Assembly (NCBI RefSeq): GCF_001194135.2
Contig: NC_068989.1
Coordinates: 64,657,865 to 64,711,631 of the forward strand
DNA from: Octopus bimaculoides
Lineage: Eukaryota
DNA length: 53,767 nucleotides
Reading direction: 5' to 3'
Positions within the stretch are counted from its first letter, which is position 1; each line of letters begins with the position of its first letter. Below the pieces are notes generated by a model. It was given only the letters and a program-made list of their open reading frames with translations, had not been told where the DNA came from and searched no databases. The translations under genes were made by a program, and so were the position numbers. Of this stretch, positions 8,286-53,326 are shown piece after piece.

Positions 8286-9134
8286 CAGGGTCACCATTTA
8301 ATACTTTTAATTTCGTGCATGTGCATTGTTTGTTTTTGATTTTGTCAACTACACAGTATAGTAGGTCAATTGGGCACCGTCTGTGAGATAAAACAGCATC
8401 ATGACGCAAAACTTTGGAAACGACATGCTATACTGCTTGGCATTCGCGCCGGAAGCTCCAATACGAACATTTCAGAGTGTTTGGGTGTCAATCTGAGTGT
8501 TTGCCGTGTCCCAAAACATATACCAAGAGTGATAAAAATCAAATATCCAGTCAACATCATGGTGTTAGAAGTGGTCACTAGTATTGGCGATGTAATTCCC
8601 CCATTCGTCTTCCCACACGGCCTTAGACACAACACGGAGGCCTACATCAAGTACCTGGAGGAGGTAGTGCTGCCTTGGGTCAAGAGAGTGGCTGCTGGAA
8701 GGCCCTATATCTGGCGACAGGGCTCTGCACCATGCCGCACAAGCACGAGAATCCAGTCATGGTTGTCAGACAATTTCTGTGACCCTATCATCCCTAACAT
8801 CTGGCTACCTAACTCCCCAGACTGCAGCCCCCTTGATTATTGTGTGTGGGGCACAGTTGAACAGGAAACCAACAAAACTCCTTGTAAAACCAAAGACAAA
8901 ATGAAGGCAAGGATTATGGCAGCATTCACCAACTTAAACAAAGAGAGCGCCCAGAAGAGTTGAAGGAGATTCCGAAGTTATCTGGAGGCCGTGGATGAAG
9001 ACAATGGCGATTTTATTCAATAAATTTACTCTTTAGTATTTCAAGATAATTTTGGTAAATATGTGTTAAAATAAAATGTCAGTGTAATTTTCATTTTTAT
9101 GTAATTTAGACGACACTTTACTCACCGCACTCTG
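8286..9134 (+). mobile_element. Internally deleted Tc1/mariner of the DD37D (maT/Bmmar1-like) group; pseudogenised transposase
   Basis: ORF 8370..8963 joins an HTH start (LWKRHAILLGIRAG) to the C-terminal catalytic half (PVNIMV...PFVFP...WRQGSAPC...WLPNSPDCSPLDYCVWG). There are 37 residues between the second D (mutated to G) and the third D. A premature TGA at 8961 is followed by an in-frame tail to TAA at 9021-9023. Ends are CAGGGT and ACTCTG; the left TIR looks truncated. Confidence 0.9.
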
Positions 9135-9375: not shown

Positions 9376-9862
9376 TGATTTATGTTTTCAAGTCGTACAT
9401 CGATATCGTTTAGAGATTGAATGTTGCCTTTTTCTGGATAATGATGGATCTCGAAGTCTAAGCCGACAAACTTGTTCATTGGCCCGGCACTTGACGATGA
9501 CTTGGGTGTGTAGGAGGTTCCGCTGGAATCCAGAGGGGATGGACCTGGAGGGTGAGGGACATGTGGAGAATCCAATAAATGTTCAGACTTTACAGGCTGG
9601 CGGCCCTGTCCCAACTGGGACATTCTGCTGGTGTCCATCGTTTTGGACGTCTTGTCAACAGACTGCTGACCTCCACTCCCAGAACACACCTGTTCGTGAC
9701 TGCTACTGGAGGGAGTCTGCTGTTGATGTACTTGTTGTAGAAGTTGTTGATGGTGATGGTGATATGGTAGTTGTTGGTGATGGTGTGGTTTTGCTTGTTG
9801 TTTTATAGGTTGTGCTTTGTGGTCTCGTCCTTTTACGGACGATACAATGCCTGCCACTGCGC
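9376..9862 (-). CDS. Internal coding exon 3 of 3 (487 bp, phase 1 to 2): His/Gln/Ser/Pro-rich low-complexity segment ending in KFVGLDFEIHHYPEKGNIQSLNDIDVRLENIN
   Basis: Acceptor caactttttgtAG at 9864-9863 and perfect donor CA|GTAAGT at 9375. 2+483+2 nt, matching ORF 9372..9857. The phase is compatible with direct splicing from 26137 (SIA-G-AVAG). Confidence 0.9.
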
Positions 9863-11914: not shown

Positions 11915-12240
11915 CAGGGGAGATAAACACTGAAATTCAATTAAGTTACTGAGGTGTACTTGCCAAGCAAATGATTTGATCAGAGACGGTGTGTTGAAAC
12001 TAAAACGACTGCAACGTGGTAGATACATGTTAACCATTCAGAAACACACAACGACTGTTAACTTCAATGAAACATTTTTTGTTTGTGATAAAGTGTGAAA
12101 TCCTTCGTCGCTCAAAATTGTGACCTTGTCACTGACACGTTGCACTTCATCTCACGCAGTGTAAAGTTGTTAGTGACAAGGTCGCAGTTTCGAGCGACGA
12201 AAATTTTTGTCACAAACGTGAAATAAGTTATAATTGATTA
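11915..12240. mobile_element. Palindromic dispersed repeat (MITE-like); partial homologue at about 4210-4400
   Basis: 33-bp arms ttcgtcgctcaaaattgtgaccttgtcactgac and gttagtgacaaggtcgcagtttcgagcgacgaa. The block gtgttgaaactaaa...ttcaacgtgg...ccattca.aaacaca...ctgttaacttca is shared with 4250-4325. Confidence 0.65.
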
Positions 12241-12905
12241 AAATCAGGTTATAGTAGGGATTTCTGGCAGCACGTTGATAACTTCGGATTGTTATGTTTT
12301 TAGACTCATCAATAAAACCAATTCTGACAGTTACTGCAGAACTTAGATGACAAGGAATACACCATTTCTGTGAATAAACACTGAGTTTATTTGTAAGTTA
12401 AATGAAAGACTTCAAGGTAAAACATAACGACACCTACAAAATACGATTAATAAAGTTGTATAAATTGTTCATAAAGCCATAAAGCTAGCTGGTGTAGAAT
12501 CAATTAGTTCTACACCAACTAATTTTATGGATTTACGGTCAAATTAACTCCTTTTTTCCTTTCTTTTTCCATTTCCCCCCTTCCACTTGTTGCATTCACC
12601 TTCCCCTGTGTGTTTTTTTACTCGTGTGATTTCACTTGTTCTAATGTCATGGTTTATAACTTGTACAGGTCATGTGCTCAGAGCCCGAGATTGCTCACAG
12701 ACATCAGGTGCCTTATTAAAATCTGCCAAGAGACAACATCTCCAACTAGTAGTAGCTCATAACTATATATTGTGTACATTAGTGAATATATATACACACA
12801 CACACACACAAAGACACACACACATATATATGTATATATGTATACATGTATGTATGTACACATATGTATGTATCTATTGAATGTGCGCTTGTGTGAGTCT
12901 GTGTC

Positions 12906-18274: not shown

Positions 18275-19964
18275 CACAATAACTTTTTCATAAACTCACT
18301 GCATTTAAAACATTCCACATCACATTAACACAAAAATGCATTTCAATTGTATTGGATTAAAAATATTCCAATCATATATATATATATATATATGTTTGTA
18401 TGNNNNNNNNNNNNNNNNNNNNNNNNNNNNNNNNNNNNNNNNNNNNNNNNNNNNNNNNNNNNNNNNNNNNNNNNNNNNNNNNNNNNNNNNNNNNNNNNNN
18501 NNNNNNNNNNNNNNNNNNNNNNNNNNNNNNNNNNNNNNNNNNNNNNNNNNNNNNNNNNNNNNNNNNNNNNNNNNNNNNNNNNNNNNNNNNNNNNNNNNNN
18601 NNNNNNNNNNNNNNNNNNNNNNNNNNNNNNNNNNNNNNNNNNNNNNNNNNNNNNNNNNNNNNNNNNNNNNNNNNNNNNNNNNNNNNNNNNNNNNNNNNNN
18701 NNNNNNNNNNNNNNNNNNNNNNNNNNNNNNNNNNNNNNNNNNNNNNNNNNNNNNNNNNNNNNNNNNNNNNNNNNNNNNNNNNNNNNNNNNNNNNNNNNNN
18801 NNNNNNNNNNNNNNNNNNNNNNNNNNNNNNNNNNNNNNNNNNNNNNNNNNNNNNNNNNNNNNNNNNNNNNNNNNNNNNNNNNNNNNNNNNNNNNNNNNNN
18901 NNNNNNNNNNNNNNNNNNNNNNNNNNNNNNNNNNNNNNNATATATGTATACATGCATACAAGAAAAGAAAACATTCATGGCTATGAAGAAGCATGTAAAC
19001 AATGAATATCTACTCGTATTAGAACAAACTCTGATTAAGAACCAAAAATATTTTTACATTATTAAAAGCATTCTAATGATAAATAACAAGGTACAGTTCC
19101 TTTTGATAACCAGAGAGGTTTTCGAACTTAATTGAATATTTAAATGCAATGTAATATTTATTACATGTAGATAAACTGAGAAGAAAAATGCAAAAACAAA
19201 ACTTTAAGTATGATGATATTATAATCACATCACATTATCTATCATTCTAAACATACATTCATTCAGTGATAAATCGATCAATCGAGCATTCAATCAATGT
19301 TTGTCTTTTAATCTAATCCGTCAATTCATTTGAAACATCCTTCGATGTCCCAGTATTCAAACTGTCGTGACAAAAACAAAAAGAAAATCCCTATTTAAAA
19401 AAAAAATGTTTCTTAATAAAAGAGCTATACTTGTTGGAGTTTAGCTGCCGTAATTATTTGATGTTTAGTTTATGAAACTGAACTAAAACCTTATGTTAGT
19501 CAATTAACGCCCTGATCTCTCTCTCTGTCTGTCTTTCTCCTCTTCCTTTATTACTACCTCTGATTATTTCTAGATTATTTAATCAAAATATACTTTTGTT
19601 TCTCATTATACATTATCTAATGTAGTCATTGTAATAAACAATGTTAACGACTTCCGCTATCTATATTCTTTTCCTTTAAATTTCTCTTTTCCATTCATTT
19701 CCCCATTCATTGTTTTGTTGTTCTTTAGAAACAGCTCAATTTTGATTCTGCTGCTGTCATGAGAAAGAGTCTTTCAACCGTAACGAATTTTCATATTTTT
19801 GTATATCTGGAATTACACCTTGCACGGTTTCTTTATTACCATTCCCCGACGGTAGGGAAGTGGTAATAATGTAGCAGATAGAATGACTAAGTAAAACTTT
19901 CCGTATCAATTCGTCCATATTAATGTTTCTTTAAAAGCTATGACAGGTATATATTTAATATCTA

Positions 19965-26136: not shown

Positions 26137-26346
26137 CTGCAATGGAACTAATAGATTCACGTTTTTTTGTGTCCAGTTCACTAGATGCATCGATCATATC
26201 CCGGCTAGCCTTCTCGGCGGAAAGCTCCACAATCCCAACTCCGTCATCGTCATCACTACCAGATAGACATGAAACGTCACTTGGTCGTCGTCGATCGGCG
26301 ATTGAGTTACGTTTTGAACCTAGGCGTTGACGGCTTGCAGTGCGTC
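26137..26346 (-). CDS. Internal coding exon 2 of 3 (210 bp, symmetric phase 1-1): (G)[69 protein letters not shown](G)
   Basis: Acceptor ctatgtttcAG at 26348-26347 and donor CAG|GTATTA at 26136. GC-richer than the flanks and open for 70 codons; it is the non-repetitive part of ORF 26102..26614. Confidence 0.85.
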
Positions 26347-32489: not shown

Positions 32490-33726
32490 CTTCTCTTTAT
32501 CACAGCTTTTGTTGGAGCACCTGGAGTCTTGCATGCGTAGCTGGTTTGCTACCTGCAGCCTACGGTACCATGCTACCCGCTCTTTACAGCTATCTAATAC
32601 TTTCCTGATTCCTCTGGCCATCCCAAGGAGGCAAACCTTTTGTAACTGCTCTACTGGCACTCTATTCCAATTTCCTTTATATTCCTTTTGATGCCTTCTG
32701 ATACTGTTCCCAAGGACCAAACAATAACTGGCACTATCTTCACCTTCTTCATTTTTCATAGCCGGCCCGTTTCTTTCTCAAGAGGGTTGTATTTATCAAT
32801 CCTTTCGCGTTCCTTCTTGACTATTCGTGGGTCAAAGGGGTATATAGCCGCGGAATTGCCATTTTGGGACATCGGCGGCAGCAGCGGTCCCGCCGTCGTC
32901 GTCGTCGTCGACATCCCGCCTGACTTCTTCGAAGAGATCGAGACGAAAAGGATCGCTTGCATACGATTCGACTTGCCGTTCGGAGTGACGTGCTTAGTGG
33001 AGCAGCTTCCACACTGCGATGTATTGAGTCTCTTCTCGCGAACGACACGATCCGCAAGAAGACTGAACGACTCTAAGCCGAAACCGTAGCCGGACCCGAG
33101 AAAAAAGAGGTGGCATGCTGGCAGAATCGTTAGCACGCCGGGCGAAATGTTTTACGGTATTTCGTCTGCCGTTTGCGTTCTGAGTTCAAATTCCACCGCG
33201 GTCGACTTTGCCTTCCATCCTTTCGGGGTCGATTAAACAAGTACCAGTTACGCACTGGGGTCGATGTAATCGACTTAATTCCTTTGTTGGTCCTCTCTAT
33301 ATTTAGCCCCCTGTGAGCAATAAATAAACAAAAAAAGGGGCATATAGCATATGTGGTACAGTTTGTCCACCAACACTAGGCCCGGTCTGTTATGCTCTAA
33401 CACCTGATCTGTTTGGATTGGCAAATACTAGATTTTACTAGTATCCGACTCCGCCACTATCTACAGTTTATGCTCATACTACATCTAGCCTCTCTCTAGC
33501 CCCACTTTTTGCCCAGTTTCTAATGTAGTACTTTTGCTTCCTGATCGTATCGCCACAACTTGTAGTGATTTTGGGCAAGTCTAGGGCACTCGTTCGTGAT
33601 ATGGGCAATGGTTTCATCCACTATATTGCAGATGCGGCACAGCGGAGACACTTGCTCATTCCTAAGGTTGACCCTCAAGTTCGTGCCAAAGCTTGGTCTT
33701 GCGCTGCCAGTATAGTGCTCTTGGTC

Positions 33727-33728
<2 letters not shown>
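32490..33728 (-). mobile_element. 5'-truncated R4/Dong-like non-LTR retrotransposon (CCHC knuckle, RLE endonuclease, 3' UTR), split by an insertion at 32849-33333
   Basis: Minus-strand translation gives STILAAQDQALA, SPLCRICNIVDETIAHITNECPRLAQNHYKLWRYDQ (CX2CX8HX4C), PFDPRIVKKERERIDKYNPL and EQLQKVCLLGMARGIRKVLDS, with frameshifts and stops. Flanked by (TAA)n on both sides. Confidence 0.85.
32849..33333 (+). mobile_element. Chimeric retro-insertion: about 257 bp CpG-rich unique segment plus family-A SINE plus A-rich tail, flanked by a 15-bp TSD
   Basis: aaaggggtatatagc (32834-32848) versus aaaggggcatatagc (33334-33348), 14/15 identical. The R4 coding sequence resumes across the duplication. 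Confidence 0.8.
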
Positions 33729-33781
<53 letters not shown>

Positions 33782-33797
33782 GTTGTTGTTGTTGTTG
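33729..33797. repeat. (TTA)n(TTG)n microsatellite
   Basis: Read directly from the sequence. Confidence 0.95.
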
Positions 33798-34200
33798 AGT
33801 GAGAGAGCAGTGCGTGCCATCAAATTGACACTGGGGTAAAAATATTCGAGGCCCAGTATAAGAATTATGACTACCCGTCTGATAAAGGTACACTGGGCAC
33901 ATGCATCACAAACATATTTGCGCGACATGGTGATCTCATATCAAGATAAAAAGCGCATGACCTTGCAGGTGGGGCCCCGTTAGAATTTTATTCAGTTTGA
34001 GTAGACCATCCTGCTCAAAAGGTCCCTGAATAAGGATTGTTTAAGGATGATAAACAGAACACCCATGTTTCTAGAAGTGAATTATCCAAATCCCAAAGAA
34101 TTCCTCGCAACGCGTGGCTATGATGCTCCCCAACTACTTCTGCCCGTGATCAGAGATGCACATATCGTCAGTCACTAAGAGGCATGCTCAACTGGTTAAG
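33798..34200 (-). mobile_element. Dispersed retroposon-like repeat with a (CAA)n/(TAA)n tail on the minus strand
   Basis: Non-coding, GC-richer block ending in a simple-repeat tail. Recalled as an abundant octopus repeat; not verified. Confidence 0.5.
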
Positions 34201-40188: not shown

Positions 40189-40793
40189 GTTTAAAACTGT
40201 CAGCAGGATCTATTTCAGACACCATAGCTACATATTATCTCAGAATTAATCCACGACTTATAAGTTCCATCCGTACTTCGTCATGACAGTGATAGCAAAT
40301 ATGAAATTCAGAGTAAAAATTAGAGCGTTTTATTAATTAGGAATATGTTTCCATTAAATAAAATCTGGAGCTTTTTCTAAAACATACACGAAAATTTAAA
40401 ATATATGATTTTGGAGTTTCAGAAGTTGTAGCTACGTATATATGGCATGTATGTGTATATGTATTCATGCGCGAGCGTGTGAATGCAAATATTGGTTCAT
40501 TAAAATTTGATTATGTATTGATATAAATGTATATTAAAGAAAAGATGAATCAGATAAAATATTTCCGAGTTGATATTGTTTGTTTATTATTTGCAGATAA
40601 TTTAGTCGGTTTTCTTGGAAGGCAGATGGAATCTAAGTATAGATCTAATTATGGATATTATCTCAAATCAAATAGTTCATATAGTAAATGATCTGAGTGT
40701 AATTTGAATTAACATTTTGAATTATCAATTTGAATTATCAATAGTAAAGTGAATATCCTCTTCATAGAAGATTGACTATTATGATGCCTTGAA

Positions 40794-40870
40794 CTGTTCT
40801 CTATGACTCATGCACTGGAATGTTGGTAAAATAGAGGCAACATTCCAATACATGAGACTATAGAAATCAG
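40794..40870 (-). ncRNA. Candidate pri-miRNA hairpin (predicted 5p 40858-40837 GUCUCAUGUAUUGGAAUGUUGC; 3p 40824-40803 AACAUUCCAGUGCAUGAGUCAU)
   Basis: Stem of about 33 bp with a 12-nt loop. On the minus strand three apparent mismatches become G:U wobbles. UG at -14/-13 and CAUC (CNNC) at +17 fit the same Drosha register. Confidence 0.6.
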
Positions 40871-41765
40871 CATGAGTGATATCTTTATAAGTAATTTCCC
40901 TTCTTTTCTGTTTTTGTTTTGTTTTGTTTGGTGAGCCATTTGTGTCGTCGTTCGTTTAACATAACGTCGAAAGCAGTTTGTTATCAGGAAGAAGAAAGAA
41001 TGTTTCCATTGTACATTACTATGTCGAAACAGTTATTAAATAAAGATGATTGGTTGTTTATGCCGATGCTTCTTTGTTAGACTCGGTTCGCTGATGGGGT
41101 TTAATAGAACCAAAACTTGTCACCGTATTGCTAATGATCAGACTCACTCCGATTCTCAAGCATTCCAGTTTTCACCAATTAAAACCTTCAGAATACTCAT
41201 TAAGTTGATGATACTCTCTCTTCACGAATGTAATTACGGGTACAATTTTAATTAATTAAATTTTATTAGCTCACTCCACTAAATATATCAACACCAACTA
41301 GACTGTTTCCTTACTACAGATTTGTAATTATAATTTCTGCTTCATTAGTTGATAGAAAAGGTGAAACGTAGTCTAAATGCATATAGAGCAAATACCTTCC
41401 TCCGAGGTCTATGTCTAATAAGTGAACTGTGGTCTTTGTTTTTCATTCATTAAAGGACTCTTGAATACGGAGCAAAAGGAAGTCGTTTTGGTGAAGAAAC
41501 TTATCTTCCTTACACACAATGTCATCGTATCTACAAATGGGAAGGTAAATTAGAAGAGAGGTATCGGTTAACGGACAGTATTTAAAAAAATATGTCCCTT
41601 AAAAATATTTCTACTAGTTCTCTCTCTAACACACCGTCTTCTTTGGTTTCTGTTCTCTTTTCATTCTTTGTAATACATACTCAGGTATAGAAACATTCAG
41701 ATACATTTTATGTATGCCTAGAAACAATCCATCCATCCATCCATCCATCCACATACATACATACT

Positions 41766-41810
<45 letters not shown>

Positions 41811-41820
41811 NNNNNNNNNN

Positions 41821-45987: not shown

Positions 45988-46631
45988 CACACATATATAA
46001 ATATATATACATATATATGTATATAAAAACATGCATACACACACGCACACATATATATATATGTATATACATATATATATATATATNNNNNNNNNNNNNN
46101 NNNNNNNNNNNNNNNNNNNNNNNNNNNNNNNNNNNNNNNNNNNNNNNNNNNNNNNNNNNNNNNNNNNNNNNNNNNNNNNNNNNNNNNNNNNNNNNNNNNN
46201 NNNNNNNNNNNNNNNNNNNNNNNNNNNNNNNNNNNNNNNNNNNNNNNNNNNNNNNNNNNNNNNNNNNNNNNNNNNNNNNNNNNNNNNNNNNNNNNNNNNN
46301 NNNNNNNNNNNNNNNNNNNNNNNNNNNNNNNNNNNNNNNNNNNNNNNNNNNNNNNNNNNNNNNNNNNNNNNNNNNNNNNNNNNNNNNNNNNNNNNNNNNN
46401 NNNNNNNNNNNNNNNNNNNNNNNNNNNNNNNNNNNNNNNNNNNNNNNNNNNNNNNNNNNNNNNNNNNNNNNNNNNNNNNNNNNNNNNNNNNNNNNNNNNN
46501 NNNNNNNNNNNNNNNNNNNNNNNNNNNNNNNNNNNNNNNNNNNNNNNNNNNNNNNNNNNNNNNNTATATATACATATATTAATAGTAATGGTAAGACAAC
46601 AAAAGAATGAAAGAGACCTCGATATTATTCC

Positions 46632-47421: not shown

Positions 47422-49348
47422 GAGTCTATAACCAGTGTGGGTTAGAAAGCTTGTTAAATATGAAACAATTTCAGTGATCAAATTGCTAGTGTTGTTGTTG
47501 TTATTGTTGCAATTGCTTAGCACAAGGTCAAAGCGAGTAGAGGGGCTCCAACCATGGTCTCTTCATGTGTTCATGCGTAAGCATGACTATGTTATTTAAT
47601 TTGTCCTTAATGCCAATGTATAATTACTGTGAGAAGTGAATGATTCAGCATATTGAAGAAATTTAAGTCTAATAAACACATTGAATTGGAGCAGACTTGA
47701 CTGCTATTATGAAGCGATCGAGTATGTACGCTTATTCGAATAGTGACTCCAAAGTTTCGGCTTGATGGGCTCGTCAGGTCATCTGACGAAGCAGGTGAGC
47801 CGAAACGTCGAAGTCACTGTCAAATATTTCCTTGTAAAAGAAATGTACACCACAAAAAGTATTTAGTAAATCTTCAGTTTAATGTTGAATTGTTTTTATA
47901 TACAACTTCACATAAACACATGCAGTAACATACATATATTGGAAGATGGGTTTGTGTGTTCATGTGTTTGGTTATACAGGTACATGTGTTAGTATTTTTG
48001 TTATGCGTATATAGTCTAGTTAATGTTGTTCACTGAATATGTATAATATATTTTAGAAATGAGTGAGAAAAATAAAATAACAAAAGCAACAAAATAGAAA
48101 AAGGGGACATTTTAAAAATATTCTTTAGTCGTTATTTAATAGATTCTGACGTTGTTATATACATGCATAATATGCGGATATATATGTATAATATATAAGT
48201 GTTTTGTGTATATTAGGAATATATTGGAAAGAATATATATATTATTTCCATTTGCTTGAATGTGCGAATATATTTATACAGTTGCTTTATACAGTAGTTC
48301 ATAATAATTTGAAATATTATAACATTTCCACAAAATACATGAAAAAATCGCAAACAAATAATTTAGAACAGAATTTTGAACAGCAGGGAATAAAGAATTA
48401 TAAAAGATTATTTGAAAATATTAAATAAAAGAATGAAAAAGTATAAAATAAGTAAAGCGAAGCGAAATAAAAATCTAGTTTTAAGAAGGAAAAAAATTTA
48501 AATGTTTGGAATGAGTTATATCCAGCAGATTATTCACAATTATATCTGTTTAAAATGAAAGCAATCTAATTAATCTTATTGTTACCAATAAGAGAGTTCT
48601 AATCATGCAGCAATAGTCTTGATGAAGAGGCTGAAACATATATGCACCGTTTTGTAATACACATCGTCTAATAATTAAAATTATATTAAATTGCCAAGAC
48701 TTTCATGTTTCAGACGAAATATTCTTTGAAATGCTTCAATAGATATTAGTTCGTATATAAAGAAGTACGAGGAGAATAATGAACGCAACTAGTAAGCATT
48801 GTTTTCCAAATATTTAATAAAACTTATAATAATCATGTCGAAATTTTTTCTGAATGATCAAAAACGTAGCTTTAAGATTTGCCTTGAATACGTGTAACGT
48901 TTTTTCATCCCTTGCGGTACGTGCTTCGTGTTGCATAACTTTATTTTCTGCACATCAATATTTTTGTATTGGGATTTATCATAAGAAGTCAATTCAACTT
49001 GATAACGATGGAAATGATGCCATATACATTCGTGACATTAGTGATATAAATTTTATGAGTTTTCAGACATCAATATTTCATCAATATTATTTTATACAAA
49101 CATGTATCGTATCTATATCCATATCTATATCTGCCGAAAAAAATAACACTGATTCATTTTGTTTCTTAATTCTAACAACCTGAAATATTATCTGAAGGAA
49201 AATAATAAAATGAAAACTGTAGACTAGAGAAAGAATGGGTATTGTATTTCAAAGTATATTTTGACGTTCATGAAAGATTGATAAATAACCATGCGTATTT
49301 CTCTTATTTGGATACCGGCAAATAAGACTAACATACTAATTTTTTAAT

Positions 49349-51465: not shown

Positions 51466-53326
51466 CAAATCTACTACATATACACATTATCCACTGGACA
51501 CCTCTGAAACACCTGAGATGCATAAGGGATATGATGCTCTTAATATATTTGACGATAGTAAGGTATGAAGAATTGCAAGAACTTGATAAATTATTAGAAA
51601 AGGTGTACACGCGCGTGCTCAGAAAAATTCCTATGAAATTTAAACTGTTATTGCGCTTCACAAAATATGCACATTAAGGTTATTTATTTTAAGCATGGTT
51701 TTGCTGGTATCATGTCTATATATTTCTCTGTTTCTCGCGTTATTAACCCTAGTGCGCCTATTATAAATATCAGGTTTTTGTAGTGGTTTGCAACCTACAC
51801 ATTTTTGCAATTTCCATATCATGGTCTTTGTATTTAGTATTTCATTGAGTTTATTGTTATTATTTCATTTGTGCACAACAGATTAGACTATTGGAAAATA
51901 TTTCATAACATCGATCTACATCAAGTAACCTCATACTAAATATCCTAGCAGTCCCTTGTAATACGGTTTTCTGAAGCTGCACTAAACTAGGTTTTATGCC
52001 TACTTCCTCTATACATCTGTTCAAATCTTTAGGAATAATTCCTAACGCACCTATAACTACGGGGATACATTTTATTCACCACACTTTCCATAGCCTCTGT
52101 AATTCCATGCATAGGTCCTGATACTTTGCTATTTTTTCTATACTTCTCATATTGACTCATATTATTTAGAACTGTAAAGTGTGTGTGTGTCTTTTTCTGT
52201 GTCTGTGTGTGAATGTGTGTTTGTATGTGTGTATTTATATATAGAAATAATAGGACTTCTGTATGCCAGAATGAATAAGACATCCTATGTGTTTTAATGT
52301 AACATTCATATTTTTTAAACACTTATCTCGAAGAATTTAATTAGTATTAACCTGTTAATGTGACTGCATGGAAATTCATGTGTCTTCCAGTTACCTGTTA
52401 TATTACGTATTGTAAAAGAAAAATATCTGAAAAAGTTTGAGAATATTATACAAGAGTAGTTGTTTGTGAATCAAATCTTACATACCATCGTTAATTTCAT
52501 TTCTACGTTTACATTGTAGTCTAGGTCGCTTTTGTCTTATGAAGCGTAACGTTTCATCTTCGACTTTTCCTTTTGTTTTAATTTGGGCCAAAGTTCCCTG
52601 CAGACAAAGAAAAATATATATGTGAATATGAAGTAAGTGCATACACAGATACGTACAAGCAAACATACGCACATACATGTATATATGCACAATCACACGT
52701 ACACACTTGTATGTAAAAGTATGTGTTTCTGTCAGCTATCTGATTTGAACGGTCAGCTGGCTACCACGACTGATGGATGTTATCAGACAACGCCTTTATC
52801 ATGAAACCATGAGTATGAGCCTCGGTACACGGGTTGCAACTTGCATAATATATGACATAGACCAATAGAATCCTCTCAATCTCATTAAAGACGTTGGTAA
52901 TATCGCCCAAGGAACTGTGATTGCGTCTGCTTATATTTATAATATTTATAAATGAGATTTCAAGCGTCAAGAGAGCACAGTAAAATATAAATATTTGCAG
53001 ATGATTTCAAGACTCATTATCAAGGAAAAAGAAAACTGAACAAAACTTTCATTTGATCCATAAGCTGTAGTCAAAAGGAGGACAAAAACATTGTGCTAAA
53101 TGAAGTAAAAAATTGAAGTCATGAGTTTTGGAAAATAAAACTTACTCAAACAACCATACTGTTCTGATTCAGAAGAACCGCTCATAGAATCGAAATAAAA
53201 GAATCCGATTTAGATAAAACATATAGCTTACAACTTATATTCAGTAATTTCCATTCATTCGTTGTCAAACATTAACACGCACGCACACGCACGCACACAC
53301 ACAAACACACTCATATACATATATAC

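What the first reader, a model, noticed from the sequence alone, without database searches (positions are those of the whole stretch)
40783..40872. Candidate lineage-specific microRNA gene with full Microprocessor geometry (minus strand)
Seen: the minus strand reads CUGAUUUCUAUAGUCUCAUGUAUUGGAAUGUUG-CCUCUAUUUUAC-CAACAUUCCAGUGCAUGAGUCAUAGAGAACAG. This folds by hand into a stem of about 33 bp (19 uninterrupted pairs next to the loop, one U/U, one A bulge, one A/A) with a 12-nt loop. Three positions are G:U on the minus strand but A:C on the plus strand, which favours the minus strand, the same as the host exons. With the 5' cut at 40858 and the 3' cut at 40803, both arms are 22 nt with 2-nt 3' overhangs, UG sits at -14/-13 (40872-40871) and CAUC sits at +17 (40786-40783). 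Established: basal UG at -14 and CNNC at about +17 are bilaterian pri-miRNA processing motifs, and coleoids have many lineage-specific miRNA families. Inference: a real, possibly intronic miRNA; the 3p seed would be ACAUUCC. I do not recognise it as a conserved family, but it may already be catalogued.
Basis: partly seen in the sequence, partly recalled or inferred. Interest (0 to 1): 0.8.

Follow-up and report, generated by a model that had tools for sequence, protein, structure and literature searches.

The report
Unverified intronic microRNA-like hairpin
A real and very stable RNA hairpin with textbook microRNA-precursor dimensions sits in an intron of an ERG-type potassium-channel gene, but nothing available here shows that it is cut into a microRNA, so it is a good candidate and not an established gene.

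Summary
The minus strand of 40872-40783 folds into a 31-bp stem with a 12-nt loop (-39.6 kcal/mol, z = -7.6). The plus strand folds less well (-28.7). UG sits at -14/-13 and CAUC at +17 relative to cuts at 40858 and 40803. The hairpin is not chance: 19 uninterrupted pairs are expected 0.04 times per strand of this window. It is the only stable hairpin in the window with this full geometry. I also showed that it lies, in sense orientation, in a 26-kb intron of an ERG/KCNH2-like K+ channel gene.

The tests that define a microRNA could not be run. No small-RNA reads and no cephalopod genomes or proteins were within reach. Rfam has no match. The bivalve orthologous intron has no counterpart. The octopus microRNA tables that are held list no matching seed site, but they cover only about half of the microRNA names I sampled.

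The window holds two complex-sequence stems of this kind in 51 kb. That rate implies roughly 10^5 in a large genome, against about 160 annotated octopus microRNA genes.

My estimates:
- about 0.5 that it is a young, unselected intronic inverted repeat (at best a proto-microRNA);
- about 0.3 that it is a bona fide lineage-specific microRNA.

The parts
40783..40872 (-). Whole candidate pri-miRNA segment, from the basal UG to the CNNC
   Evidence: RNAfold gives -39.6 kcal/mol, z = -7.6. The hairpin is kept in a 301-nt context.
40793..40871 (-). Stem-loop proper: 31 bp, arms of 34 and 33 nt
   Evidence: Dot-bracket structure and arm lengths.
40871..40872 (-). Basal UG at -14/-13; G40871 is the first paired base
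   Evidence: Read. P(UG) at a fixed site is 0.067.
40837..40858 (-). Predicted 5p arm GUCUCAUGUAUUGGAAUGUUGC (22 nt)
   Evidence: It starts 13 nt above the basal junction. Sequence printed. This is an inference and has no read support.
40826..40837 (-). Apical loop CCUCUAUUUUAC (12 nt); no UGU/GUG motif in it
40803..40824 (-). Predicted 3p arm AACAUUCCAGUGCAUGAGUCAU (22 nt, seed ACAUUCC); the likelier guide, because it has a 5' A and A:U pairs at its 5' end
   Evidence: Sequence. The choice of guide strand is an inference from known AGO loading rules.
40783..40786 (-). CNNC motif (CAUC) starting at +17 from the predicted 3' Drosha cut
   Evidence: P(CNNC at +16 to +18) is 0.09.
52486..52597 (-). 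Upstream host exon (GTLAQIKTKGKVEDETLRFIRQKRPRLQCKRRNEIND-G). It has an AG acceptor and a GTATGT donor, and ends in phase 1.
   Evidence: tblastn of P0002 residues 220-264 matches it.
26137..26346 (-). Next host exon downstream of the hairpin; it starts and ends in phase 1
   Evidence: Its phase fits both neighbouring exons. A weak ortholog match exists in Solemya.
9376..9862 (-). Further host exon with a conserved C-terminal ERG segment and a GTAAGT donor
   Evidence: Twelve homologues found. tblastn hits.

Best explanation
The element is an evolutionarily young inverted repeat, single-copy in this window. It lies in lineage-specific DNA of a 26-kb intron of an ERG/KCNH2-like K+ channel gene and is transcribed, as part of the pre-mRNA, in the orientation in which it folds best.

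The RNA forms a 31-bp hairpin that happens to have the dimensions of a Microprocessor substrate: a stem of about 34 nt, a 12-nt loop, unstructured flanks, a basal UG and a CNNC at +17. My reading is that it is not an established, selected microRNA gene. Most copies would be degraded with the intron, and some would possibly be edited by ADAR. At most a small fraction would be cropped at 40858/40803 and diced into a duplex of about 22 nt, whose 3p strand (AACAUUCC...) would be the one loaded. That makes it a 'proto-miRNA'.

Shown: the fold, the geometry, that it is not chance, and the intronic sense location.
Inferred: transcription, the origin by inverted duplication, and the lack of selection.
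For: 1. Base rate. The window of 51 kb of called bases holds two complex-sequence stems of at least 19 consecutive pairs (12119-12186 and this one). It holds about five non-repetitive single hairpins at or below -35 kcal/mol per 90 nt, two of them more stable than this one. Scaled to a genome of a few Gb, that is on the order of 10^5 hairpins. Against this, 162-164 microRNA genes are annotated in two Octopus species (PMC9699675).
2. Stem shape. The stem is almost perfect: 19 uninterrupted pairs and an arm-to-arm DNA difference of about 6 in 33. This is what a recent inverted duplication looks like.
3. Motifs. That raises a prior of about 0.5-1% but does not overturn it.
4. Missing motifs. The apical UGU/GUG motif is absent. 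The lower-stem GAG (40801-40799) is fully paired and not mismatched.
5. Databases. No Rfam family matches. No 8-mer site for any of eight seed registers appears in the held target-site tables for O. vulgaris microRNAs.
6. Intron comparison. The orthologous intron in the bivalve Solemya velum is about 2.1 kb and has no counterpart of the hairpin. The hairpin therefore sits in DNA gained in the lineage, amid SINE and LINE debris.
7. Literature. Introns are the usual birthplace of new hairpins and microRNAs (PMC10270192).
Against: - It is the only hairpin in the window that combines the correct stem length, a loop of at least 10 nt, UG at -14/-13 and CNNC at +17.
- The basal junction predicted by folding falls exactly on the UG.
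- The apical and basal rulers (about 21-22 nt and 13 nt) agree on the same cut.
- It is in sense orientation in a gene of a channel class that is typically neuronal, and the novel octopus microRNAs are mostly neural.
- Four of the six arm-to-arm differences keep pairing as G:U on the transcribed strand. The binomial p is about 0.07 by my hand calculation, and it is biased by ascertainment.
- The catalogue check is weak. The held tables were cut when stored, and only 3 of 6 sampled 'Ovu-Novel' names occur in them. The hairpin could therefore already be an annotated microRNA.
Confidence: 0.5

Rival explanations
1. It is a bona fide, lineage-specific canonical microRNA gene, hosted in the ERG-channel intron. 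Drosha/DGCR8 crops the hairpin at 40858/40803, helped by the basal UG and by an SRSF3-type factor bound to the CNNC. Dicer removes the 12-nt loop. The 3p strand AACAUUCCAGUGCAUGAGUCAU (seed ACAUUCC) is loaded into Argonaute. It may or may not already be in MirGeneDB.
For: - The full pri-miRNA geometry was verified.
- The joint chance of the motifs is 0.6%.
- It is the only such hairpin in the window.
- It is intronic and in sense orientation.
- MFEI is 1.3 for the 56-nt precursor.
- Coleoids gained about 90 novel microRNA families, and the authors call their count an underestimate (PMC9699675).
- The motif definitions are given in PMC6298569.
Against: - There is no expression or conservation evidence of any kind.
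- No Rfam family matches.
- The seed sites are absent from the held O. vulgaris tables, but this is weak evidence.
- The base rate of comparable hairpins is high.
- The 5p arm starts with G, there is a bulge and a mismatch right at the predicted Drosha cut, and there is no apical UGU.
Confidence: 0.3
2. It is a remnant of a mobile element (a MITE or foldback-type palindrome) that is present in many copies across the genome. Any small RNAs from it would be repeat-derived siRNA or piRNA-like products.
For: - The window is rich in repeats: a SINE-like family with at least 9 copies and reverse-transcriptase debris.
- Other palindromes are present, for example 12104-12201.
- Near-perfect short palindromes are typical of MITEs.
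Against: - The arms and the surrounding 2 kb have no other copy in the window.
- No target-site duplication flanks the palindrome...ACTCAT|G...T|TCAAGG.
- The 79-nt size is shorter than usual MITEs.
- The unrelated metagenome hits to the 10-nt core do not extend beyond it.
Confidence: 0.12
3. It is an intronic dsRNA element that acts in cis, as an ADAR editing substrate or as a structure that affects splicing or stability of the host pre-mRNA, without producing a microRNA.
For: - In octopus, most A-to-I editing lies in introns and 3'UTRs, where hairpins are enriched (PMC9699675).
- A 31-bp stem is long enough to bind ADAR (established knowledge).
- It is in sense orientation in a channel gene.
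Against: - It lies 11.6 kb and 14.4 kb from the nearest exons, so it cannot pair with them locally.
- No complementarity to the exons was found in the window.
- Nothing suggests selection for such a role.
Confidence: 0.05

Closest known systems
Canonical intronic animal microRNA precursors (Drosha/DGCR8 substrates, as curated in MirGeneDB)
   Same: A stem of about 34 nt (optimum about 35 bp), a 12-nt loop, single-stranded flanks, a basal UG at -14/-13, a CNNC at +17, 22-nt arms with 2-nt offsets possible, and sense orientation in an intron.
   Different: There are no reads and no second-species ortholog. The apical UGU/GUG is lacking, and so is a mismatched GHG. The stem is more perfect than in most established microRNAs. 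There is a bulge and a mismatch at the predicted crop site.
Octopus- and coleoid-specific 'Novel' microRNA families (Zolotarov et al. 2022, PMC9699675)
   Same: The channel class of the host gene is typically neuronal, which would fit their neural expression.
   Different: None of the eight possible seed-site 8-mers appears in the held parts of their Data S2 and S3. Those tables cover only about half of the names I sampled.
miR-181 family (recalled from memory, not tested)
   Same: The predicted 3p strand starts with AACAUUC, the same first seven nucleotides as miR-181.
   Different: Position 8 differs and the rest of the sequence is unrelated. miR-181 is a 5p product, and the family is not known from molluscs. 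Rfam gives no mir-181 hit even at E <= 10. The resemblance is a seed coincidence and not homology.
MITE or foldback palindromes
   Same: A short inverted repeat with 19 uninterrupted pairs, in repeat-rich intronic DNA.
   Different: There is no target-site duplication and no second copy in the window. Genome-wide copy number is unknown.

Membership tests
Canonical animal microRNA gene (MirGeneDB criteria) | Hairpin with at least 16 complementary nucleotides between the two arms and a loop of at least 8 nt | tested here: met
   31 bp in total. 20 of the 22 positions of the predicted duplex are paired. The loop is 12 nt.
Canonical animal microRNA gene (MirGeneDB criteria) | Reads of 20-26 nt from both arms with homogeneous 5' ends | not testable with these tools
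   No small-RNA-seq data can be reached. The relevant public sets are GSE192550 and PRJNA791920 (named).
Canonical animal microRNA gene (MirGeneDB criteria) | 2-nt 3' offsets between the 5p and 3p products (the Drosha and Dicer signature) | tested here: inconclusive
   The structure allows 22-nt arms with 2-nt offsets at both ends. The real ends are unknown.
Canonical animal microRNA gene (MirGeneDB criteria) | Presence of the hairpin in a second species, with arms more conserved than the loop | not testable with these tools
   No cephalopod sequence is in any collection I could reach. The only testable ortholog, the bivalve Solemya velum, has a 2.1-kb intron without the hairpin. This only excludes deep conservation.
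Optimal Microprocessor substrate (Auyeung 2013; Fang and Bartel 2015, as summarised in PMC6298569) | Stem of about 35 bp with single-stranded flanks | tested here: met
   The arms are 34 and 33 nt. The flanks are unpaired in the centroid fold.
Optimal Microprocessor substrate (Auyeung 2013; Fang and Bartel 2015, as summarised in PMC6298569) | Basal UG and downstream CNNC | tested here: met
   UG at 40872-40871 (-14/-13) and CAUC at 40786-40783 (+17). The joint chance is 0.6%.
Optimal Microprocessor substrate (Auyeung 2013; Fang and Bartel 2015, as summarised in PMC6298569) | Apical UGU/GUG motif at the loop junction | tested here: not met
   The loop is CCUCUAUUUUAC. The nearest UGU is inside the stem, at 5p positions 17-19.
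Optimal Microprocessor substrate (Auyeung 2013; Fang and Bartel 2015, as summarised in PMC6298569) | Mismatched GHG in the lower stem | tested here: inconclusive
   GAG at 40801-40799 lies on the 3' side of the lower stem, but all three bases are paired. The exact register of the motif is recalled from memory.
Any described RNA family (Rfam 15) | Covariance-model score at or above the gathering threshold | tested here: not met
   No match at the gathering threshold in the whole window. At E <= 10 the only overlapping hits are noise: a plant MIR169_8 at 15.9 bits against a threshold of 107, and two plus-strand hits that only touch the 3' arm (mir-1829 at 16.4 bits against 60; snoZ103 at 16.0 against 44).
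Mirtron | Hairpin ends defined by a 5' splice site GU and a 3' splice site AG, with flanking exons | tested here: not met
   GU at 40858-40857 and AG at 40802-40801 exist. They would leave a 4-nt overhang. The donor GUCUCA is poor, there is no polypyrimidine tract, and there are no flanking exons.
MITE or foldback transposon | Terminal inverted repeats flanked by a target-site duplication | tested here: not met
   The flanks ...ACTCAT|G and T|TCAAGG share no duplication.
MITE or foldback transposon | Many dispersed copies in the genome | not testable with these tools
   It is single-copy within the 53.8-kb window. The source genome is not available.

The most novel reading that the evidence does not exclude
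A newly born, octopod-restricted microRNA hosted in an intron of an ERG-type K+ channel gene. It would have been created by a local inverted duplication and already be equipped with the basal UG and the CNNC. Its 3p guide would have the seed ACAUUCC. It would be absent from current catalogues because it is species-specific or restricted to certain tissues.
Probability: 0.2. Interest if true: 0.4.

Novelty: new member of a known kind. Interest (0 to 1): 0.25.

Why it matters
If small-RNA data confirmed it, this would add one lineage-specific microRNA to the already large coleoid expansion. It would also give a clean example of how a microRNA is born: an intronic inverted repeat in a channel gene whose class is typically neuronal, one that already carries the Microprocessor motifs. 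That gain is incremental and not surprising. If it is not processed, it is one of a very large number of intronic hairpins. In that case it mainly shows that structure and motifs alone do not identify microRNA genes.

Tried and rejected
Catalogue check
- I searched the full text of 8 million papers for both arm sequences and found nothing.
- I searched the supplements of Zolotarov et al. 2022 and of its preprint for the arm sequences and for eight seed-site 8-mers. None was found. The files hold no precursor sequences and were cut when stored, and only 3 of 6 sampled microRNA names occur in them.
- No supplements are held for the MirGeneDB 3.0 paper.

Orthologous loci
- A protein search with the host exons found no cephalopod protein.
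- Exact look-ups of three window ORFs found nothing.
- The nearest relatives are a bivalve and gastropods.
- One 1-kb ENA contig (L075) is only 77% identical in the exon.

DNA scans
- The metagenome scan for the core palindrome gave 74 hits. Their flanks match at random level, so they are unrelated.
- The bacterial and archaeal genome scan for the 3p 22-mer gave 0 hits.

Readings rejected
- Chance hairpin.
- Member of the window's SINE-like family.
- Mirtron: poor splice signals and a 4-nt overhang.
- tRNA or other known ncRNA.
- Homology to miR-1 or miR-181: a seed-level coincidence only, with the wrong arm.

I ran no further search on the ORF across the hairpin. The absence of the octopus host exons from that collection shows that the search could not succeed.

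Full report
THE OBSERVATION

RNAfold gives a single hairpin at -39.6 kcal/mol. The 200 dinucleotide-preserving shuffles average -16.8 kcal/mol (z = -7.6), and none folds as well.

The structure has 31 base pairs in blocks of 4, 7, 1 and 19:
- an A/A mismatch at 40867/40797;
- a bulged A at 40859;
- a U/U mismatch at 40857/40806;
- a 12-nt loop at 40837-40826.

The reverse strand folds to only -28.7 kcal/mol. This is because the G:U pairs of the minus strand (40850/40813, 40848/40815, 40865/40799 and the terminal pair 40871/40793) become A:C mismatches. The hairpin is kept in both the MFE and the centroid structures of a 301-nt context.

I recounted the geometry on the structure:
- With the 5p arm at 40858-40837 and the 3p arm at 40824-40803, both arms are 22 nt with 2-nt 3' overhangs at both ends.
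- U40872/G40871 are at -14/-13, and the G is the first paired base.
- CAUC at 40786-40783 begins at +17.

IS IT MORE THAN CHANCE?

Yes.
- First-order Markov sequences with the window's composition contain 0.04 stems of at least 19 consecutive pairs (G:U allowed, loop 3-30) per strand. Only 3 of 100 simulations contained any.
- UG at -14/-13 together with CNNC at +16 to +18 occurs at 0.6% of positions.
- I scanned the whole window on both strands in 90-nt steps and refolded every stable, non-low-complexity hairpin in 130 nt. Only this one combines arms of 33-34 nt, a loop of at least 10 nt, the UG and the CNNC.

The same scans also give the base rate. Outside microsatellites, the window holds two stems of at least 19 consecutive pairs (this one and 12119-12186). 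It holds about five single hairpins at or below -35 kcal/mol, and two of them (12104-12201 and 47733-47823) are more stable than the candidate.

CONTEXT

The window is AT-rich eukaryotic DNA with 14 assembly gaps, many TA and CA microsatellites, and repeat debris. I could not verify the organism.

I found the host gene. Three minus-strand exons have canonical splice sites and mutually compatible phases:
- 52597-52486, ending in phase 1 with a GTATGT donor;
- 26346-26137, phase 1 at both ends;
- 9862-9376, with a GTAAGT donor.

A HMMER search of 1.8 billion representative proteins found 12 relatives of the last exon. One of them, P0002, carries a cyclic-nucleotide-binding domain. It is closest to KCNH2/hERG among solved structures (E = 6e-87). 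It aligns collinearly to 52615-52481 and to 9596-9375 on the minus strand. A second search returned a gastropod protein named 'Potassium voltage-gated channel sub H member 2'.

The hairpin therefore lies, in sense orientation, in the 26.1-kb intron between 52486 and 26346. It is 11.6 kb from the upstream exon and 14.4 kb from the downstream exon. In the bivalve Solemya velum the orthologous intron is about 2.1 kb and holds no counterpart of either arm. The hairpin thus sits in DNA gained later in the lineage.

REPEAT STATUS

Neither arm, nor the surrounding 2 kb, has another copy in the window. The only other matches are microsatellites at the edge of the query. The hairpin is not part of the SINE-like family that has at least nine copies in the window. 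No target-site duplication flanks the palindrome. Genome-wide copy number could not be tested.

KNOWN FAMILIES

- Rfam 15 gives nothing at gathering thresholds for the whole window. At E <= 10 around the locus it gives only noise.
- Neither arm sequence occurs in the full text of the held literature.
- The supplements of the octopus microRNA paper (PMC9699675) that are held do not contain precursor sequences. Its Data S2 and S3 list 8-mer target sites per O. vulgaris microRNA. None of the eight 8-mers corresponding to plausible 5p or 3p registers of the candidate is present.
- This is weak evidence. The files were truncated when stored, and only three of six randomly chosen 'Ovu-Novel' names occur in them.
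- That paper required a novel microRNA to be present in both O. vulgaris and O. bimaculoides. It annotated 164 and 162 genes and called this an underestimate.

WHAT COULD NOT BE DONE

The defining tests of a microRNA are reads from both arms with sharp 5' ends and 2-nt offsets, and conservation in a second species.

No cephalopod protein or contig is in the collections:
- The host exons found only bivalve and gastropod relatives at 37-54% identity. The one higher match, P0015, is 73% identical over about a fifth of the query, on an unidentified 1-kb ENA contig.
- Exact look-ups of window ORFs failed.
- The metagenome scan returned 74 palindromes that share only the 10-nt core I searched with. 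Their flank identity is at random level.

WEIGHING

For a microRNA:
- The stem length matches the roughly 35-bp optimum, and the UG and CNNC are where Microprocessor and SRSF3 use them (PMC6298569).
- The basal and apical rulers agree on one cut site.
- The flanks are unstructured.
- The predicted 3p strand has a favourable 5' A and weak 5' pairing.
- The locus is intronic and in sense orientation, and introns are hotspots for new microRNAs (PMC10270192).

Against:
- The base rate is high. Two to five comparable hairpins per 51 kb scales to the order of 10^5 in a genome of a few Gb, against a few hundred microRNA genes at most. My rough estimate is that perhaps a tenth of those hairpins have the right stem and loop lengths.
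- The UG-plus-CNNC coincidence is worth a likelihood ratio of perhaps 5-25. I recall from memory that only a minority of real microRNAs carry both motifs. The cut site was also chosen with the motifs in view.
- This takes a prior of about 0.5-1% to somewhere between a few per cent and about 20%. I raise it somewhat for the coherence of the whole geometry.
- The apical UGU is missing. The lower-stem GAG is paired and not mismatched. A bulge and a mismatch flank the predicted crop site. The near-perfect upper stem looks like a recent inverted duplication.
- The G:U strand argument is weak. It gives a one-sided p of 0.125 for three transitions on one strand. Treating 4 of 6 arm differences as structure-preserving gives p of about 0.07. 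Both figures are biased, because the hairpin was noticed for folding well on that strand.

VERDICT

The hairpin is real, is not chance, and has the shape of a Microprocessor substrate.

My estimates:
- About 0.5 that it is a young, unselected intronic inverted repeat. It would at most be processed inefficiently (a proto-microRNA) and would possibly be a bystander ADAR substrate.
- About 0.3 that it is a bona fide lineage-specific microRNA, catalogued or not.
- About 0.12 that it is a multi-copy transposon palindrome.
- About 0.05 that it is a cis-acting dsRNA element.

Even if confirmed, it would be one more member of a known and already large class, so interest is modest. The decisive checks are simple for anyone with the genome and the public small-RNA data, and they are listed under next steps.

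Noticed in passing
window 52597-52486, 26346-26137, 9862-9376 (minus strand): Three phase-compatible exons encode the C-terminal region of an ERG/KCNH2-like potassium channel. The intron that holds the hairpin is 26.1 kb, against about 2.1 kb in the bivalve Solemya velum (L076 15563-17647).
   Followed up: yes
window 12104-12201 (both strands): A 98-nt near-perfect palindrome with 42-50 bp, at -66.6 kcal/mol in a 130-nt fold. It is more stable than the candidate, but its arms are 45 nt or longer and it has a small loop and no UG or CNNC. It is single-copy in the window. It may be a foldback or MITE-type element.
   Followed up: partly
window 47733-47823 (both strands): Another complex-sequence hairpin, at -41 to -44 kcal/mol per 90 nt, with an inner stem-loop. 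It is single-copy in the window.
   Followed up: partly
window 12452-12554: A hairpin of -36 to -40 kcal/mol lies about 250 nt from the 12104-12201 palindrome. On the plus strand its arms are 36 nt and it has a CNNC at +17, but no basal UG and a loop of only 6 nt.
   Followed up: partly
window ~4.0k, 6.5-6.9k, 13.4-13.6k, 30.6k, 33.1k, 39.3k, 43.2k, 44.1-44.4k, 50.8-51.2k: A SINE-like dispersed repeat has at least nine copies at 65-80% identity, including two adjacent copies at 44.1-44.4 kb. The hairpin locus is not part of this family.
   Followed up: partly
window 30.8-33.9 kb (minus strand), especially 33523-33819: Open frames that look like retrotransposon remains. Only a weak Pfam zf-RVT hit was found (E = 2e-4, below the cut-off). 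Long TAT/ATA-type runs are nearby.
   Followed up: partly
window 8340-8960 (plus strand): A 207-codon open frame lies in the intron just downstream of the last host exon. It has no Pfam match and no exact record in the gene collection. It may be a decayed transposase.
   Followed up: partly
window, 14 runs of N (e.g. 18403-18939, 46087-46564, 41811-41820): Assembly gaps, mostly next to TA and CA microsatellites. One 10-N gap lies about 940 nt from the hairpin, so local assembly errors cannot be excluded for the wider region.
   Followed up: no
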